Part shown: piece by piece, positions 10,703 through 17,106 of the stretch | Layout: each line of letters opens with the position of its first letter | Numbering within the stretch: the stretch's first letter is position 1 | NCBI GenBank assembly: GCA_038496445.1 | Contig: JALMLS010000062.1 | Location: 496,001-560,000, forward strand | Direction: 5' to 3' | Length of the DNA: 64,000 nt | DNA from: Trichosphaerium sp. ATCC 40318 | Lineage: Eukaryota; Protista; Tubulinea | Notes under the pieces: model-generated | Told to the model about the DNA's origin: nothing | The model's database searches: none | The model's input: the letters and a program-made list of their open reading frames with translations, nothing else | Program-made: the position numbers and the translations under genes

Positions 10703-12055
10703 TTAAAGCATCGCAAGAAAGTTACAAGCCACTATCAGTAGAATATAAAGTGTAGTATCTGGAATACCACTCTTTTGTCTACATTTTGGTGGTAGTAAAG
10801 CAAAAATGCTGTGAATATCTAAACACGTGTAAGAACAAGACTCAAAAAAAACGGCTCAAAAAAAAGTACCTTGACGAATTTCGAGTTCACATCCATCTGT
10901 AGTTCTTGCATTTACTTGTGAAACATCGACAATACAATGAGATGATAGTTTAATTATTAACAAAGGATGTCCATCATGGCCATCAACGATAATACTACCA
11001 TCAAGGAACGCACATCCACTAACATCAATTACAGCACCAGCTGTTATTTGTAACGTTCCGTTTAGTTGTAGCACCAGGTGACCTAAAAAAAAGTACATTA
11101 GAGAAGTAATGTTGTTTAATGTATCTAAAGCATACCGTCTATATTTGTGGGTACATCAACTATACGTGTATCATCAATCACATCTTGTTTTACTAAAACA
11201 CGTGAGTGTTTTTTGAATGGTTTAGAAATAAGAAGTAAGCGATGGTACCACAAGGACTTTTAGAATAAGCGTATGCAATAGCAGTGCCAATGAGAACTTC
11301 TCCAACCGTTGTGACGGTCGAATTCGTTCCAACAAAGAGGCCTATGCGTAGGGAAGGTGATATAGAGTTATCAGTGAGCATTGACCCCTACATATTTGTA
11401 AACATGATTTGACATTGTATTACACACCTTTTCGTACGCAAAGAGTGCGCTCTTACCGAGGAGTTGGGCAATAACTGATGCATCTGGACCTGTACTTGCA
11501 GTAATCATACATTTTTTGGAACAGTTTGATACTACAGTATGATTACCGCTTGCAAGGTTTGCTGCTAACGAATGTGAAGAATCTACAATGTCGAGGAAAT
11601 GCTCTTTTCTTGTTGAAATATTGCCCATTTTTAAATTCTGTATTGCGAACTCCTCGGACACAATTATTGGAGTGGCAGAGATTGAAAGACGTGGCACTCT
11701 ACCGGACTTGGCTGATTGTAATATAATCTAAAGTTGGTAAGTGGTAGTTAGAACGAAGAGACCTTACAATCATGGCGTATTCTGTTGTTTCAGAAGTAGC
11801 TACAGAGGCCGAACATCTAACGTCAGCTTTAAAGCCTGCTTCCATGGCTAGTCGTATTAAGAGCTCGTCTCCTTGGCCATCAGCTGTGCAGTTATTGACA
11901 TCAGCCTTGGTTTTTTAGTTAATTCGGAAAATACAACAAAATAGTGTCACGTGTACCAAAAAGAGCACTGTATCGCATCGTGTAGGTAAAGCACGTGATT
12001 GTACAAAAAATGCAAATAAGGCCAACAATAATATTGCTCTACAATAAGAAGACAT
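10703..12055 (-). CDS. Secreted or cell-surface protein, possibly GPI-anchored (multi-exon)
   Basis: Signal peptide MSSYCRAILLLALFAFFVQSRA; exons match ORFs 11371-11697, 11193-11381 and 10856-11098; hydrophobic tail TTLYILLIVACNFLAML*. Confidence 0.6.
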
Positions 12056-12434
12056 GGCAATATAATAGGATGTATTGTTCAAAACGGAATATCTACAGCG
12101 ATTTTAGCGTGTAATTTATCTCAAAAAATAATTAACCTCTTCGACGTACAACAGTGGTTTTCGAGCTTATACTTTTGTAAAACAGAAATTACAATGACCT
12201 TTGTAGAAAAGGTTGAACAAATTGCTTATTGTACTCGTTTAGTTAAAAACGAAATTAATCCCGTTGACCATCATCCTAATTCCGGTGGCTTTGCAGAGTA
12301 AGGTCCCTTTTAGAAGTCAAGTTTAGAAGTTTCGAAGAGCAAGGAATAGGCTAAAAGAAAAATGGACTTTATTGTTTTTTTTTTTCTTTTCTATGTACAT
12401 TTTATCACGTATTGCATCGTGTTTTGTCTGGTAT

Positions 12435-15400
12435 TTAAACTATGTCTTTACGTTGTTTTGGGCTCAAGTAATCAGTAAGAGTTGAACGTGATGATGAATT
12501 ACAGAATGCGTTTAGCTTTGTTTTTTGATATGTTGTCAAGTTCTTGATATTTTTAAAATTGCTGTGTTTCAATTGATACTTTTGATCCTTTGATGGTGCA
12601 CTAACTGCCATGCTGTTTATAGAAGATACTACTTTTTTACCTTGTGCAGACTTTTTTGCTTCCTTCTCTTGTGATTTTTTATGGATGTAAATGATATCAC
12701 CATTTTGGTTTTTTATAGCATGTTTAATAAGTTTACCGATTGGTAGAATTGTCGGGTTAAAAGTGACTTCGACAACCTACTCAGTTTATAAATAACAAAT
12801 GATTGATAAAAAGAAAACAAACTTGTTGTCAAATTTTTGGCAATTGCACGTGATACTCTTTGAGTGATCAGAATAGTATATTCTTGGTCAATGGCGAAAA
12901 AAAAGTCATTCTACTCAAATTTTCATGGTCGTGAATTCGCAAGGAACTTGTTCCTTGCGCATGACACGCATGAAAATGAGTAGAATGACTTTTTTTTAAT
13001 GACCAAGACAGTGGTTTCTATGCACTTTCCTTTTTGAAACAACGCGGGTTTTTTATAAAATTTATGAGCGGTTAGTAAACCGTCATAAACCGCCGTAACC
13101 CGTCGAAAACCGTCAGAATATTCACAATAAACATGGCTAGCAACTCTTCCCGTGTGTTGACATTCATTAACTCGTTTAAATACAACAAAGATGCTGGTGC
13201 GACACAACCACCTCCAGCAGCACAAGAAACTGTTGTTGACAACAGCCAAACAACGGAAGACCCTTTCTCGTTGATAAAACTTCCTATTTACAATGTCGTT
13301 CCAGAGAAGAGCAAGAAAAGATACTTGAGAGAGTGGCAGAAGTATCAAATTTGGGTATGCCGTTTGACTATTTTTCTGGGTAATTTTTTTAACCTCTATT
13401 TTCAGGCATCAAAAACCAACAATTTCCTTACCAATTTGGAGAAAGAGAGGTTCTTGGATCAGCCCGAGGCATTTGAGGCGTATTTTGCCCACATTACTCA
13501 ACAATATGCTCCGTCAACTATGTGGACCATCTACAGTTGTTTACAGACCATGCGTGTTCAAATCTACGGCCGTAACTTTGACGATGTACCACGCATCAGA
13601 AAATTCCTCAAAAAGCGCAGCAAGAACCACAAGAAGAAAAAGGTACACCTTGCGCACAGTAACTTCGTTTCTAACTCCTTACAGGCTCCAAATTTCACTT
13701 TGTCTCAAATGAGAACCTTTGCGCTTAACGCACCTACTACCCTTGAAGATAACTTCCTTCAACAGAAGGTAGTGCTGTTTTTGGGTTTGTATGGGGCCTG
13801 TCGTGCAGACGATATGCATAACTTGTGCTGGGAGCACGTGCAGCTGTACCAAGATCCGACAAACACACACATCACGGTACAATTTTTTTTTTTTGCTTAT
13901 TCTAAATGCGTGTAGGTTGTTGTTCCTCCAGGAAAGAACAGCAAACAACGTAGCTTCACCATACCAAAACAAAACCATCCTATGTCTCCTTTTCAAACGC
14001 TATTAAAGTACGCATCTTACTTTAGTGTTGACGCAAGGCACCCAACAACAAAATTTCTTCGTTGTTTTAAAAATGGAAAACCGATTAAACGCGCTCTGTC
14101 AAAAAGAACAATTGCTGCAGTTGTTCCGAAAATAGCAGCTTTTCTAGGGCTTGAAAACCCTTCTTCCTACACTGGGCATAGCCTCAGACACACTGCAACC
14201 ACTTTTGCAGCAGATGCTGGTGTTTCTGAAATGAATCTTCTCGATTTTGGTACGTTTTAAAGGTTTTTTTTTTTTTTGTTTTGTAAAACTCACTTTTGTA
14301 CAGGTGGTTGGACGAGCACAGCATCCATGCAAGGATACATTCACTCCAACGCATCAGTAAAAAACAGTAATGCTGCTGTTATTACTAAGGCACTAGCAAT
14401 TGAGGAAGAATCACCAATTCCAATGGCGGTGGAGGAGAAGGAACCCCAAATTTTGAAGTCACGCAAAAGAAAAGCTCCGCCAGCTGTAGAAAAATTACGC
14501 AAACACTTGAAGCTTACTGTAAATGAGGCTGTTGAAAACAAGGAAAACGTAAATGACGAAAACGTGAAAAAAGTCTGTGTAAACCATGATGGCAAAAATA
14601 TCACGATAAACCTCTCCTTCAACTTTTAAATGTTCACAAATAAAACACACCTTGGTATTCAATTCTTTGTTGTTCGTGCATGCTCACTTTGTTTTTCTAC
14701 GCCAAAAAGTCATTCTATTTGTTGTTTCCGTGAAATTAGAATGAAAAAAGTGACTTTAGAATGAGAAAAGGGTTGGAATCGTACAATAAGTCATTCTAGA
14801 ATGTTGTCCTAATTTGCTCACTTTATATCACGAACTTAGAGGGAAAAAGGACCAATCAGATGGGAGAAAAGTCGAATAAATTTTATAAAACCCGCGTCAA
14901 AAAGGAAAGTGCATAGAAAAAAAGTTTGTTTCGAAACTTGTAGAAAACTCCGTTTTGTGACAATTCTTACCTCGTGAAAGTGGTGAAATCCAGCTCTAGT
15001 TGCAACTACACCATCTAGGGATCCAAGATTACGTTCACCGCTCCAAAAACAGTACTACAAAGAAGCGATTAGTCAAAGAATAAAAAAAAGTTTTTCTTTC
15101 TCAAAAAACGTACCATTGCGAATGTTATTTGTTCTAATTCAGGCTCTGTAGACTTTTTGATATCGGATAGATACTTTGGAACTGTTCTCTTGCATTTTTC
15201 AAGAGACTCTATGAGCATCAAGACGAAATTACGCGATTTGATTTCCTTCGTTTTTGTTTTTTCTACAATTGTTGCTCCAGATGCGTCATGGATACTGAAC
15301 GTTCTGTGGCTTTTACGAACTAAACGGTATGATCAGATTTAACGTTCTTGCGTATTTTTTGACTTAAAAGAGTACGTACCACTCTCTGCAGTATGTACTA

Positions 15401-15587
15401 AGATGAATTCAGCGTTTAAGAGCTCTTCTAGGATAGGATACTTGGAGAATAGAGAGCTTGGTAGTTTAGCTTCTTTAGCGTATACCTATGGTTATTTAGT
15501 CGCGTATGGACTTGTTTTTAACGTTACGTTAAAGATTGGCTTTCCATTAGCTTTCTTCATAGCTTCGTTAACTGTGATAGTGAGCAT
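12435..15587 (-). CDS. Thioredoxin-like + MsrA-like protein; its last intron (12777-14970) holds the recombinase element
   Basis: In-frame GT-AG splicing gives MLTITVNEAMKKANGKPIFN / VYAKEAK...YPILEELLNAEFILVH / ...PKYLSDI...LEQITFAM / YCFWSGERNLGSLDGVVATRAGFHHFHE / VVEVTFNPTILPI...KDQKYQLKHS...LSPKQRKDIV*. CFW...GV..T..G...E-VVEV is the MsrA core. Confidence 0.8.
12882..13008. repeat. ~127-nt imperfect palindrome (hairpin) at the element's left end
   Basis: Nested arms: TCTTGGTCA/TGACCAAGA; A8GTCATTCTACTCA/TGAGTAGAATGACT8 (21 bp perfect); ATTTTCATG/CATGAAAAT; CGCAAGGAAC-TT-GTTCCTTGCG. Confidence 0.95.
13015..13064. repeat. Left copy of the element's inverted repeat
   Basis: TTTCTATGCACTTTCCTTTTTGA...ACGCGGGT6ATAAAATTTA is the reverse complement of 14877-14919, with a 23-bp perfect block and a second block differing by small indels. 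Confidence 0.95.
13133..14629 (+). CDS. Tyrosine recombinase (phage-integrase fold), 5 exons
   Basis: Removing introns 13355-13405, 13643-13684, 13877-13915 and ~14250-14303 gives an open frame with catalytic R (GLYGACRADD), K (PPGKN), HxxR (TGHSLRH), W (FGGW) and Y (MQGYIH). It also has a YAPSTMWTIYSCL core-binding segment and a basic NLS-like tail (KSRKRKA). Confidence 0.92.
14877..14919. repeat. Right copy of the element's inverted repeat
   Basis: TAAATTTTATAAAACCCGCGTCAAAAAGGAAAGTGCATAGAAA. Confidence 0.95.
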
Positions 15588-17106
15588 TTATTGTATTAGG
15601 TGTATTGAGTAAGTATTAATGATGCCAGCGTACGTGTTATGACGATTTTTTTTCAACGTTTTTTCGACGTTATTATTTTCGGAATTTAGCGTCAAGCGGA
15701 AATTTCCGTAATTTTCAAAGTGCCAGCTTGACGAGCTGTACGGAAGTGTTCTTGACCGCCTTGTGGCGTAGCTGTAAGCTAGATTTCCTTTAAATCAGGC
15801 TGGATATGTTTTGCTGTTGCGAGATGCTGCTTGCGCTTTTTTTTGTTGCTTCTGTGATTGCAAATGTAATGCGATCAAACGCAGGATAGTGGCCACAGAG
15901 ATAAACGGGTACCTTCAAGCGTATTAAAATTACACTTGCAAGTAAGACAACAATCTAGTTTGACAGTCAAATCATAATCTTCAATCATTTCAAACATCAT
16001 ATGTTTGTGATAAAATAAAACAAAAGTATCCTCCCTAGGTGAGGACACGGTATTTTTGTTTGTTTTCATTCAGATGCACTTCCTAGGTAAGGCCGCTGGT
16101 TTTTTTTGAATTCTTTTTTTTTTTTAGGTACCAAGTAAGTTCTATGTTCACCGATACTTTTAGATCACGGAAGCCGCTCATAGATTTGTTACTTTTTTTT
16201 TTTTTTTTGGATTTTTTGTTGGTTTTATAGACCGACCATTATGTGTCTACTTTCGTCAGCCACTACGAAAGGTTTAAGGGGGTTTTATGTGAGTCGCTTC
16301 GGTTAGTCAAACCGAAACTAGCTGTGGAGAACTACTTCCATCTGATATCTAGAATATATTCGTTTGTTTTTATACCCATAAAGTTGTCGAAAAAATAAAT
16401 TGTGGGAGATCGAAGCTTCTAGAAGCTTTTATTTTTTCATAAAAAACAGACCACGCCACTGGCATGTATTGGTCTTAAAACTACCAACGGTGTTGATTTC
16501 AGTCGTATTCCTGCTGTGGATTTTTTGGATATTTAAATCAGAAAAAAAGAGGAAAGCTCTATTTTTACTATCGTATATTCTGCGATGCCTGAGCTATGCA
16601 CCTCAACATACACTTCAACTTATGCGTGAATTTTTTCAACACATTTCCTTTGCACTAGCAACGCTGGTTAGAGGCAACGCCATAATACCATGCAAAGTTT
16701 ACAGGACATGGAGCTTAGTTAAAATTCGTATTTTTGTAGCAACGCTAGCTTTGAAACCTGTTTTGTTATTGCACTCGTGTGTAGATGTAGCTCGCTTACT
16801 GGCTAAGTTAGTGCCTATTGAGTCTTGCTATAGCGACATTAAGCAGCTGTAGTTTCTAATATTTCACAAAGAGCCACCAACAACAACAAGTTAAAACATC
16901 TGTGTACTTGTCAGAATCGCCATGAGACGCAAGAAAACGCCACTATAGTGAGCCATGGTGGATAATCAACGCAATAAGTGATATTGGTGCTTTTGAAACA
17001 GGTGTTACCAGATCCAGGGCACTACAATGTGCCACTTACATTAAGTTGTGTTTCCAATCGGTTGGTTCTCTGAATTCAATTAATACTAAGATAAAACAAT
17101 CTAAGC

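What the first reader, a model, noticed from the sequence alone, without database searches (positions are those of the whole stretch)
12871..14930. Intact Crypton-like tyrosine-recombinase element nested antisense in a host intron
Seen: the spliced YR frame keeps all catalytic positions (R-K-HxxR-W-Y) and has four short host-style introns. The element sits in the opposite orientation inside the intron separating HFHE from VVEVTF in an MsrA-like gene. That intron (12777-14970) keeps its GT and AG and would be only ~130 nt without the element. Known: YR-only DNA transposons are Cryptons. Inference: this is a recent, potentially active insertion that is tolerated because it is spliced out, and it may be an undescribed protist family.
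Basis: partly seen in the sequence, partly recalled or inferred. Interest (0 to 1): 0.85.

Follow-up and report, generated by a model that had tools for sequence, protein, structure and literature searches.

The report
Crypton-like recombinase element in intron
An intact, expressed "jumping gene" that encodes only a tyrosine recombinase sits backwards inside an intron of a host gene and is spliced out cleanly. Its non-coding ends have a folded-back layout, shared with distant relatives, that has so far been described for DIRS retrotransposons but not for Cryptons.

Summary
A 436-aa tyrosine recombinase (YR) gene with five exons and four introns of 39-54 nt lies on the + strand at 13133-14629. 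It keeps R193, K224, H305-x-x-R308, W331 and Y340. Introns 2-4 and a poly(A) site at about 14662 are seen in RNA contigs. It lies antisense in a 2,194-nt GT..AG intron (12777-14970) of a weakly MsrA-like gene, and RNA contigs from two runs join the flanking exons.

The protein is Cre-like in fold. By sequence it belongs with the insect-type CryptonI recombinases, at 32% identity or less to anything found.

The new point is the non-coding layout: a left end reading AATAGTATATTC, a 127-nt hairpin, an inverted repeat, the gene, then the partner repeat ending in an A-run. Joining the right end to the left end gives a sequence mirrored by the internal hairpin-arm-plus-repeat segment. This is the geometry of the DIRS "internal complementary region". 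Four related elements from three other sources share it, and all five fall in one supported clade.

Not shown: recency, copy number, an empty site or circles. The host lineage was not identified. The scan has a second note on this same stretch (s1-372589) and none on other DNA.

The parts
12872..14923 (+). Whole element, best estimate (ends +/- about 5 nt; 2,052 nt)
   Evidence: The left end is set by the motif AATAGTATATTC, shared with both L007 elements at the same offset from the hairpin. The right end is set by the outer end of the inverted repeat plus an A-run, as in four relatives. No second copy was available to fix the ends to the base.
12872..12883 (+). Conserved left-end motif AATAGTATATTC
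   Evidence: It occurs once in the 64-kb window. It is near-identical to AATAGTATATTTC at the start of L007 E1 and E2. L002 has AATAGCTATTTTC and L005 has AATAGAAATTTTC.
12882..13008 (.). 127-nt imperfect palindrome (arms A and A')
   Evidence: Self reverse-complement match of 81% over 136 columns. Folded as DNA it gives -46.3 kcal/mol, z -13.1, with 0 of 200 shuffles as good.
13015..13065 (.). Inverted repeat, left copy (B'), containing TATAAAA at about 13054
   Evidence: Pairs with 14876-14919 at 86% over 51 columns, including a 23-nt perfect core. Its use as a promoter is inferred only.
13077..13114 (+). Four AAMCCGYC repeats spaced exactly 10 nt apart
   Evidence: Start positions are 13077, 13087, 13097 and 13107. 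The window holds 9 matches against 3.75 expected. A related motif lies in both inverted-repeat copies. Their function is inferred: protein-binding sites or a promoter.
13133..13354 (+). YR exon 1 (ATG; N-terminal motif)
   Evidence: There is no RNA cover.
13406..13642 (+). YR exon 2 (core-binding, SAM-like helices)
   Evidence: The transcript contig starts at 13434.
13685..13876 (+). YR exon 3 (catalytic Arg193)
13916..14249 (+). YR exon 4 (Lys224, His305-x-x-Arg308)
14304..14629 (+). YR exon 5 (Trp331, Tyr340, C-terminal tail, TAA stop)
14640..14662 (+). AATAAA signal and poly(A) site
   Evidence: Transcript contig L001 ends in a run of A after window position 14662.
14704..14798 (.). 3' subterminal cluster of the TCATTCTA motif (two + and two - copies)
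   Evidence: Six of the window's ten TCATTCTA sites lie in the element: two in the hairpin arms and four here.
14876..14923 (.). Inverted repeat, right copy (B), with terminal A-run
   Evidence: One RNA-run contig ends at 14920.
12777..14970 (-). Host intron that holds the element
   Evidence: GTAAGAAT...CTGAGTAG on the minus strand. The 2,194-nt skip is seen in X2 and X4.
14971..15054 (-). Host exon ending ...GFHHFHE (CFWSGE motif)
   Evidence: PMSR, E 0.015.
12438..12776 (-). Host last coding exon, starting VVEVTFNP
   Evidence: No Pfam hit.
14697..14784 (-). Cryptic 88-nt minus-strand intron inside the element
   Evidence: An X1 contig runs 14996-14785, joins to 14696 and continues to 14504. 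The joint ends are CT..AC on the + strand, and the host donor at 14970 is left unspliced.

Best explanation
This is an autonomous YR-only DNA element of the Crypton kind, in the CryptonI-like lineage. It is integrated antisense in an intron of a host gene.

Shown: its single gene is transcribed, spliced at introns 2-4 at least, and polyadenylated. It encodes a complete Cre-like recombinase. The host removes the whole element with the intron.

Inferred: the recombinase binds the repeated motifs in the hairpin arms, next to the inverted repeats and in the 3' subterminal region. It pairs the two ends and excises the element as a circle, joining the A-run of the right end to AATAG of the left end. 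It then re-inserts the circle without a target-site duplication.

In the circle, the junction arm (B+A) and the internal segment (A'+B') would form one long palindrome of about 240 nt, carrying two mirror copies of the junction. I propose that this palindrome is the recombination site or part of it. It may act in a folded or cruciform form, as with integron attC sites or the CTX phage attP. This last step is speculative.

Whether this copy still moves is unknown.
For: The gene model and its expression are supported. Pfam Phage_integrase scores 44.8 bits against a cut-off of 27.1. The AlphaFold model has pLDDT above 85 over most of residues 20-250. It matches Cre-loxP structures at Foldseek E 3.5e-10 and TM 0.59-0.65 over about 280 residues. 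The catalytic hexad is conserved. The recombinase shares the diagnostic stretch ..NGKC..Q.IG.NT.. / YTGHS.RR / GGWKS..AEGY with the published CryptonI sequences, but not with the DIRS or CryptonF sequences in that alignment. The element has no RT or second gene. The same layout occurs in the window, L002, L005, and L007 E1 and E2. In each, the predicted right-end|left-end junction aligns with the reverse complement of the internal segment: 100/106, 63/76, 72/86, 67/81 and 68/82 identical, with scores 63-138 against a highest shuffle score of 34. In L007 two elements lie head to tail, so a real B|AATAG junction can be read. All five hairpins fold far better than shuffles, z -5.2 to -13.1. The five recombinases fall on one side of a branch with support 97/93, apart from four relatives without the layout and one with plain terminal inverted repeats. 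The TCATTCTA and AAMCCGYC motifs are concentrated in the element. No target duplication is visible at 12872 or 14923.
Against: Only one copy was seen. No empty allele and no circle or tandem junction was found for this element. A contig of another sample crosses the same right junction. In the window the centre of the mirror is imperfect: 5 nt against 9 nt between the arms, and AATAG itself is not mirrored. The four introns, absent in the relatives, fit a long-resident and possibly immobile gene. The termini rest on analogy with relatives, not on copies from this genome. Some relatives lack the layout: the firefly cluster L004, and L003, L006 and L009. Whether L002 and L005 are DNA or RNA contigs is unknown.
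Confidence: 0.6

Rival explanations
1. It is an immobilised or domesticated recombinase gene. A former element now persists as a single-copy, intron-bearing, expressed host gene lodged in another gene's intron.
For: There is one copy in the window. The same right junction is present in another sample. It has four host-style introns with GTAC-type donors like the host's, while the relatives' genes have none. It is steadily expressed in runs of 2015 and 2023.
Against: It keeps every catalytic residue and the whole non-coding layout (left-end motif, hairpin, inverted repeats, motif clusters) that is conserved in mobile-looking relatives. Domesticated Cryptons usually lose both (Kojima and Jurka 2011). 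A first-stage note reports another intact intron-containing recombinase with the same Tyr-after-intron-4 feature elsewhere in this genome (s1-372930, unchecked).
Confidence: 0.25
2. It is a non-autonomous DIRS-type retroelement. It keeps only the recombinase and the end/ICR geometry, and is copied through RNA by a reverse transcriptase supplied in trans, with the internal segment acting as the splint that closes the cDNA circle.
For: The order left end, L'R' internal segment, right end is that of the DIRS-1 ICR. That ICR is essential for retrotransposition, and DIRS-1 RT acts in trans (PMC7192593). A first-stage note reports a YR retrotransposon in the same genome (s1-372461, unchecked).
Against: The recombinase groups by motifs with CryptonI, not with the DIRS sequences. 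Every relative that has the layout is also YR-only and 1.4-2 kb long, so the RT-less state is ancestral to the clade. The mRNA is efficiently spliced and ends at 14662, about 260 nt short of the right end. A retro-copy would therefore lack the introns and the 3' end. No full-length transcript was seen.
Confidence: 0.08
3. It is an introner-like event: the insertion itself created the intron in a previously uninterrupted exon.
For: Crypton-derived introners have been reported (PMC12130899). The residual intron of about 142 nt is two to three times the 39-88 nt of neighbouring introns.
Against: About 95 nt on the left and 47 nt on the right of intron sequence lie outside the conserved element ends. 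The splice sites are not at the element termini.
Confidence: 0.05

Closest known systems
CryptonI elements of insects (Kojima and Jurka 2011, Mob DNA 2:12)
   Same: It is YR-only, with no C-terminal GCR1_C or peptidase domain. The catalytic-domain motifs are the same (FGAxR..EL; K in a beta-hairpin; NGKC..Q.IG.NT; YTGHS.RR; GGWKS..AEGY), as are the N-terminal KSK..Y..W motif and the helical core-binding domain.
   Different: Identity is about 30% or less, on a long branch. The host is not shown to be an insect. The gene has four spliceosomal introns. The published CryptonI and CryptonA elements are said to have no terminal repeats at all. This element and its clade have a hairpin, 44-51-nt inverted repeats and a mirrored junction.
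DIRS-1 and DIRS-like retrotransposons (ITRs plus internal complementary region)
   Same: An internal segment is complementary first to the left extremity and then to the right extremity of the element, that is, to the circle junction (PMC7192593). The integrase is a YR.
   Different: There is no Gag, RT, RNase H or methyltransferase. The internal segment lies directly next to the left end and 5' of the gene, not near the right repeat. Complementarity is 80-94% rather than exact. The recombinase motifs are of the CryptonI type.
CryptonF-1_cRei, the active Crypton of Chlamydomonas (Genome Res 2023;33:45)
   Same: It is a YR-only DNA element for which insertion and clean excision by site-specific recombination at a short terminal motif have actually been observed. 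It is the working model for mobility here.
   Different: It belongs to a different Crypton group (F) and has a short CACCG terminal or target motif. No hairpin or mirror layout is reported for it. No transposition was observed here.
Folded single-strand substrates of bacterial YRs (integron attC; CTX phage attP with XerCD). From my own knowledge, not tested here.
   Same: They are imperfect palindromes whose pairing is conserved while the sequence drifts. They have conserved unpaired positions, and a YR is the enzyme. In L002, L005 and L007 the hairpins keep same-strand CGAG motifs that cannot pair, and three of them share the loop CGAGC(G/A)(T/C)AGCGAG.
   Different: These are bacterial systems with no sequence relationship. 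There is no evidence here for single-stranded intermediates.

Membership tests
Tyrosine recombinase / phage integrase superfamily | Catalytic domain recognised by PF00589 above its gathering score | tested here: met
   P0001 (residues 85-436) scores 44.8 bits against 27.1, E 1.5e-11.
Tyrosine recombinase / phage integrase superfamily | Catalytic R, K, H-x-x-R, H/W and Y all present | tested here: met
   R193, K224, H305, R308, W331 and Y340 lie in invariant or near-invariant family columns.
Tyrosine recombinase / phage integrase superfamily | Two-domain Cre/Xer-type fold | tested here: met
   The AF2 model has pTM 0.65. Its best PDB matches are Cre/Tre-lox complexes, TM 0.59-0.65, E down to 3.5e-10.
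Crypton (YR-only DNA transposons) | The YR is the only element-encoded enzyme, with no reverse transcriptase or DDE transposase | tested here: met
   No other ORF of any size, and no other Pfam domain, lies between 12872 and 14923.
Crypton (YR-only DNA transposons) | No TIRs or long repeats; only 4-6-bp direct repeats at the termini | tested here: not met
   There is a 127-nt palindrome plus 44-51-nt inverted repeats. A possible 4-nt ATAG at both ends (12874 and 14913) cannot be told from chance. This feature is a description of the known members rather than a mechanism.
Crypton (YR-only DNA transposons) | Multiple copies, insertion polymorphism and a circular intermediate | not testable with these tools
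   The assembly and the DNA reads were not searchable. The window has one copy. Two metagenome scans were empty.
CryptonI group | YR sequence clusters with the CryptonI references | tested here: inconclusive
   The motifs agree with CryI1_NVi, CryI1_TC, CryI1_RPro and CryI1_AA in the published alignment. The best database hits are arthropod YR-only proteins. No tree with labelled Repbase references could be built.
CryptonA / DUF3504 group | Recognised by Pfam DUF3504 (PF12012) | tested here: not met
   Only PF00589 is reported at E up to 0.1. DUF3504 clusters appear only as second-rank look-alikes in the Atlas.
DIRS-like retrotransposons | Gag, RT/RNase H (and methyltransferase) ORFs | tested here: not met
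   None is present in the element.
DIRS-like retrotransposons | Internal region complementary to both extremities (ICR) | tested here: met
   The junction-versus-internal alignment is 100/106 identical in the window and 63-72 of 76-86 in four relatives. The geometry is as described in PMC7192593.
Introner | Element termini coincide with, or supply, the splice sites | tested here: not met
   About 95 nt and 47 nt of intron lie outside the conserved ends.

The most novel reading that the evidence does not exclude
A whole clade of Crypton-type, RT-less YR elements carries the DIRS hallmark, an internal complement of the circle junction. Here it is built as a hairpin abutting an inverted repeat. 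If so, this geometry belongs to the recombinase's own reaction, for instance as a palindromic or folded recombination site. It would predate the capture of a reverse transcriptase, making such Cryptons the likely ancestors of DIRS retrotransposons and giving a first handle on how animal-type Cryptons find their ends.
Probability: 0.3. Interest if true: 0.8.

Novelty: new variant of a known kind. Interest (0 to 1): 0.6.

Why it matters
Cryptons are the least understood class of eukaryotic DNA transposon. Their ends are described as featureless, which makes them hard to annotate and leaves their mechanism mostly a matter of analogy. Here one complete, expressed element and four distant relatives show a conserved and easily searchable end structure: a left-end motif, a hairpin and a mirrored junction. 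This gives a way to find and delimit such elements. It predicts the exact circle junction to look for in reads or by PCR. It also ties YR-only elements to the DIRS architecture. The locus is also a clean, RNA-supported case of a 2-kb autonomous element tolerated inside an otherwise short-intron gene.

Tried and rejected
(1) Wider element bounds, set by a 7-nt direct repeat AGAAAAC (12812-12818 and 14942-14948) and by apparent similarity to the extreme ends of contig L005. The local-alignment scores (31 and 32) lie within the range of 300 shuffles (maxima 32 and 35). The left alignment also conflicts with the AATAG anchor. Rejected as probable low-complexity chance.

(2) The hairpin as a separate foldback or MITE outside an element bounded only by the inverted repeats. 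Rejected because each of the five elements has its own hairpin on the same side. In the L007 pair there is no hairpin after the second element and no repeat before the first. The 14-nt AAAAAGTCATTCTA is also shared between the hairpin arms and the 3' region.

(3) Looking for more copies or flanks. The exact 260-aa read-through ORF is not on record. Two exact-pattern scans of metagenome contigs, one with the right-end core and one with exon 1, found nothing. The scan's own index has no look-alike.

(4) Host identity. An Atlas search and a homology search with a 389-aa ORF of the window gave nothing usable.

(5) The word-index homology search with the family alignment returned only 9 proteins, none named.

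(6) Rfam gave only a sub-threshold miRNA-precursor hit on the hairpin, 27.7 bits against 90. There are no tRNA genes nearby.

(7) The firefly cluster L004, and L003, L006 and L009, were checked for the layout and do not show it.
Full report
**What is there.** On the + strand an ATG at 13133 opens a reading frame. Once four short GT..AG introns are removed (13355-13405, 13643-13684, 13877-13915 and 14250-14303; 51, 42, 39 and 54 nt), the frame runs uninterrupted for 436 codons to a TAA at 14627-14629.

A transcript contig from a JGI sample (L001, product P0001) equals residues 85-436 exactly. It aligns to the window as four perfect blocks with introns 2, 3 and 4 removed, and it ends in a poly(A) run after 14662, 17 nt past an AATAAA. 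Logan contigs of two further runs (X1 of 2023, X3 of 2015) skip introns 3 and 4 as well.

Intron 1 and exon 1 have no RNA cover. They rest on the frame, on the splice signals, and on the fact that exon 1 encodes the N-terminal motif of the protein family (..PEKSKKRY....W).

**The host gene.** On the minus strand the exons ...YCFWSGERNLGSLDGVVATRAGFHHFHE and VVEVTFNP... flank an intron at 12777-14970 (GTAAGAAT...CTGAGTAG, 2,194 nt). Contigs of runs X2 and X4 join these exons exactly, and the X4 contig also skips the next intron upstream, so these are mRNAs and not empty alleles. The neighbouring introns are 39-88 nt long.

The label 'MsrA-like' is thin. Only the 28-residue exon touches Pfam PMSR, at E 0.015 and below the cut-off, and the last exon hits nothing.

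A further X1 contig runs from the host exon across the unspliced donor into the element, and there removes an 88-nt minus-strand intron (14697-14784). The element is therefore also transcribed antisense as part of host pre-mRNA.

**The protein.** Pfam places it in the phage-integrase family at 44.8 bits against a cut-off of 27.1. An AlphaFold model built on a 15-sequence alignment is confident over the two folded domains. Its best solved matches are Cre and Tre bound to lox DNA (TM 0.59-0.65 over about 280 residues, E down to 3.5e-10). R193, K224, H305, R308, W331 and Y340 occupy the invariant or near-invariant columns of the family.

An exhaustive phmmer search with exon 4 against 1.84 billion representatives found 466 relatives at E up to 0.001. 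Apart from its own transcript, the best are at 30-46% identity in that segment. The named ones are arthropod 'Tyr recombinase domain-containing' proteins from Ignelater, Pseudolycoriella and Anoplophora. The Atlas look-alikes are an arthropod YR-only cluster first and DUF3504 clusters second.

The supplementary alignment of Kojima and Jurka (2011) shows that this family is their CryptonI group. The stretch RFF..Y..GKC..Q.IG.NT...P..IA..L.L..P..YTGHSFRR...LL.D.GG....LK.HGGWKSS.VAEGY is shared. The DIRS and CryptonF sequences in the same file lack it. The window's protein has a diverged version of every one of these blocks. Pfam DUF3504, the CryptonA signature, is not hit.

**The non-coding layout.** Reading from left to right, the element contains:
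- AATAGTATATTC at 12872-12883.
- A 127-nt imperfect palindrome at 12882-13008 (arms A and A'; DNA fold -46.3 kcal/mol, z -13.1).
- Six unpaired bases.
- An inverted-repeat copy B' at 13015-13065, which contains a TATAAAA.
- Four AAMCCGYC repeats spaced exactly 10 nt apart, starting at 13077, 13087, 13097 and 13107.
- The recombinase gene.
- A cluster of four TCATTCTA motifs at 14704-14798. The same motif, within a 14-nt identity, sits in each hairpin arm.
- The partner repeat B at 14876-14919, running into an A-run that ends at 14923.

Six of the window's ten TCATTCTA sites lie in these 2 kb. There is no second copy of any part of the element in the 64-kb window.

**The same layout elsewhere.** I fetched the contigs that encode relatives.
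- L002 (P0006) and L005 (P0008) each show a 125-150-nt hairpin immediately followed by an inverted-repeat arm, then an intronless YR gene, then the partner arm at or near the contig end.
- L007, a 64-kb metagenome contig (P0160), holds two diverged elements head to tail. Each starts with AATAGTATATTTC, a hairpin and a repeat arm. The first element's right arm runs straight into the second element's AATAG.

For all five elements I joined the right end to the left end and aligned the result with the reverse complement of the internal segment (A' plus B'). The alignments run through the join with 100/106, 67/81, 68/82, 72/86 and 63/76 identities. Scores are 63-138 against a highest shuffle score of 34. 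In four of the five, both the join and its mirror read ...AAAA(A)ATAG...

All five hairpins fold far better than shuffles (z -5.2 to -13.1). In a maximum-likelihood tree of 48 family members, the five recombinases lie on one side of a branch with support 97/93. Four relatives whose loci lack the layout, and one with plain 51-nt terminal inverted repeats, lie outside it. The layout is therefore a trait of a subclade and not of all CryptonI-like elements.

**Bounds.** By analogy with L007, where the homology between the two elements begins exactly at AATAG, I place the window element at 12872 to about 14923 (2,052 nt). No target-site duplication is visible. A wider pair of bounds, suggested by a 7-nt direct repeat, did not survive a shuffle control.

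**How this compares with what is known.** The literature I could search describes Cryptons as lacking terminal inverted or long repeats. Fungal and stramenopile Cryptons have 4-6-bp direct repeats, and animal Cryptons have none. I found no paper that joins Cryptons with a hairpin or an internal complementary region.

The geometry found here, an internal segment complementary first to the left and then to the right extremity, is the one that defines the DIRS-1 internal complementary region. That region has been shown to be essential for DIRS-1 retrotransposition (PMC7192593). Here it occurs on elements of 1.4-2 kb that have no reverse transcriptase.

**Mechanism.** The shown steps are transcription, splicing of introns 2-4, polyadenylation, a complete catalytic set in a Cre-like fold, and clean removal of the element with the host intron. 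The inferred steps are binding of the recombinase to the repeated motifs, excision as a circle joined A-run to AATAG, and re-insertion without duplication, as observed for CryptonF-1_cRei in Chlamydomonas. It is speculative that the 240-nt palindrome formed in the circle (B-A-loop-A'-B') is the recombination site, perhaps in a folded form.

**What is not established.** Copy number, age and current mobility are not established. A contig of another sample crosses the same right junction, so the insertion is at least shared between the sampled strains. Runs X1 and X2 show no differences from the window over about 1.2 kb of the element. They show about 2% differences left of it and about 0.3% right of it, and this unevenness is too large to interpret.

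The four introns, with the same GTAC-type donors as the host's, argue for long residence in this lineage. First-stage notes mention many other YR elements in this genome. One of them is another intact, intron-containing recombinase whose catalytic Tyr follows intron 4. I could not read those pieces. I could not identify the host lineage either.

**Verdict.** This is a new, highly diverged member of the CryptonI-like recombinase lineage with a conserved end architecture not described for Cryptons, so I class it as a new variant of a known kind.

Noticed in passing
window 14697-14784 (minus strand): An 88-nt GT..AG intron on the host strand lies inside the element. It is spliced in an X1 contig that keeps the host donor at 14970 unspliced. 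The removed piece spans three of the four 3' TCATTCTA motifs.
   Followed up: partly
window 13077-13114: Four AAMCCGYC repeats lie at exact 10-nt spacing between the left inverted repeat and the ATG. A related CGGGTT..ATAAA motif sits in both inverted-repeat copies and is repeated in the 51-nt terminal inverted repeats of relative L010.
   Followed up: partly
L002 about 88-100; L005 about 89-103; L007 about 2366-2378: The hairpin loops of three relatives, whose proteins are about 34% identical, share CGAGC(G/A)(T/C)AGCGAG. Their stems carry same-strand CGAG motifs that cannot pair. The window's hairpin lacks these features.
   Followed up: partly
L007 5313-5854 versus L008 about 5311: A 542-nt insertion polymorphism with a CCATT duplication lies 13 nt after the right end of the second YR element. 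It looks like a solo LTR or another transposon.
   Followed up: partly
L004 3800-21343 (Ignelater luminosus contig): At least five YR element copies, 79-86% identical, are clustered within 18 kb. They lack the hairpin and mirror layout. The annotated proteins P0002-P0004 read through two or three adjacent units.
   Followed up: partly
window 14913-14919; L007 5300-5307; L002 1-8: GTGCATA(G/A) recurs at or just beyond the right end in three elements: inside repeat B in the window, as the flank in L007, and at the contig start in L002. This is unexplained.
   Followed up: no
window 12847-12852: A CACGTG lies in the residual host intron just left of the element. First-stage notes report this hexamer as highly iterated across this genome.
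   Followed up: no
window 12438-15600 (minus strand): The host gene keeps a CFWSGE motif and ..HEVVEVTFNP, but it lacks most of the MsrA domain by Pfam. Its last exon is a lysine- and serine-rich tail with no family match.
   Followed up: partly
window 12000-12800 versus 12872-14996, runs X1 and X2: The contigs differ from the window at about 2% left of the element, at 0% across about 1.2 kb of the element, and at about 0.3% right of it. This may reflect haplotype structure or recent identity of the element.
   Followed up: no
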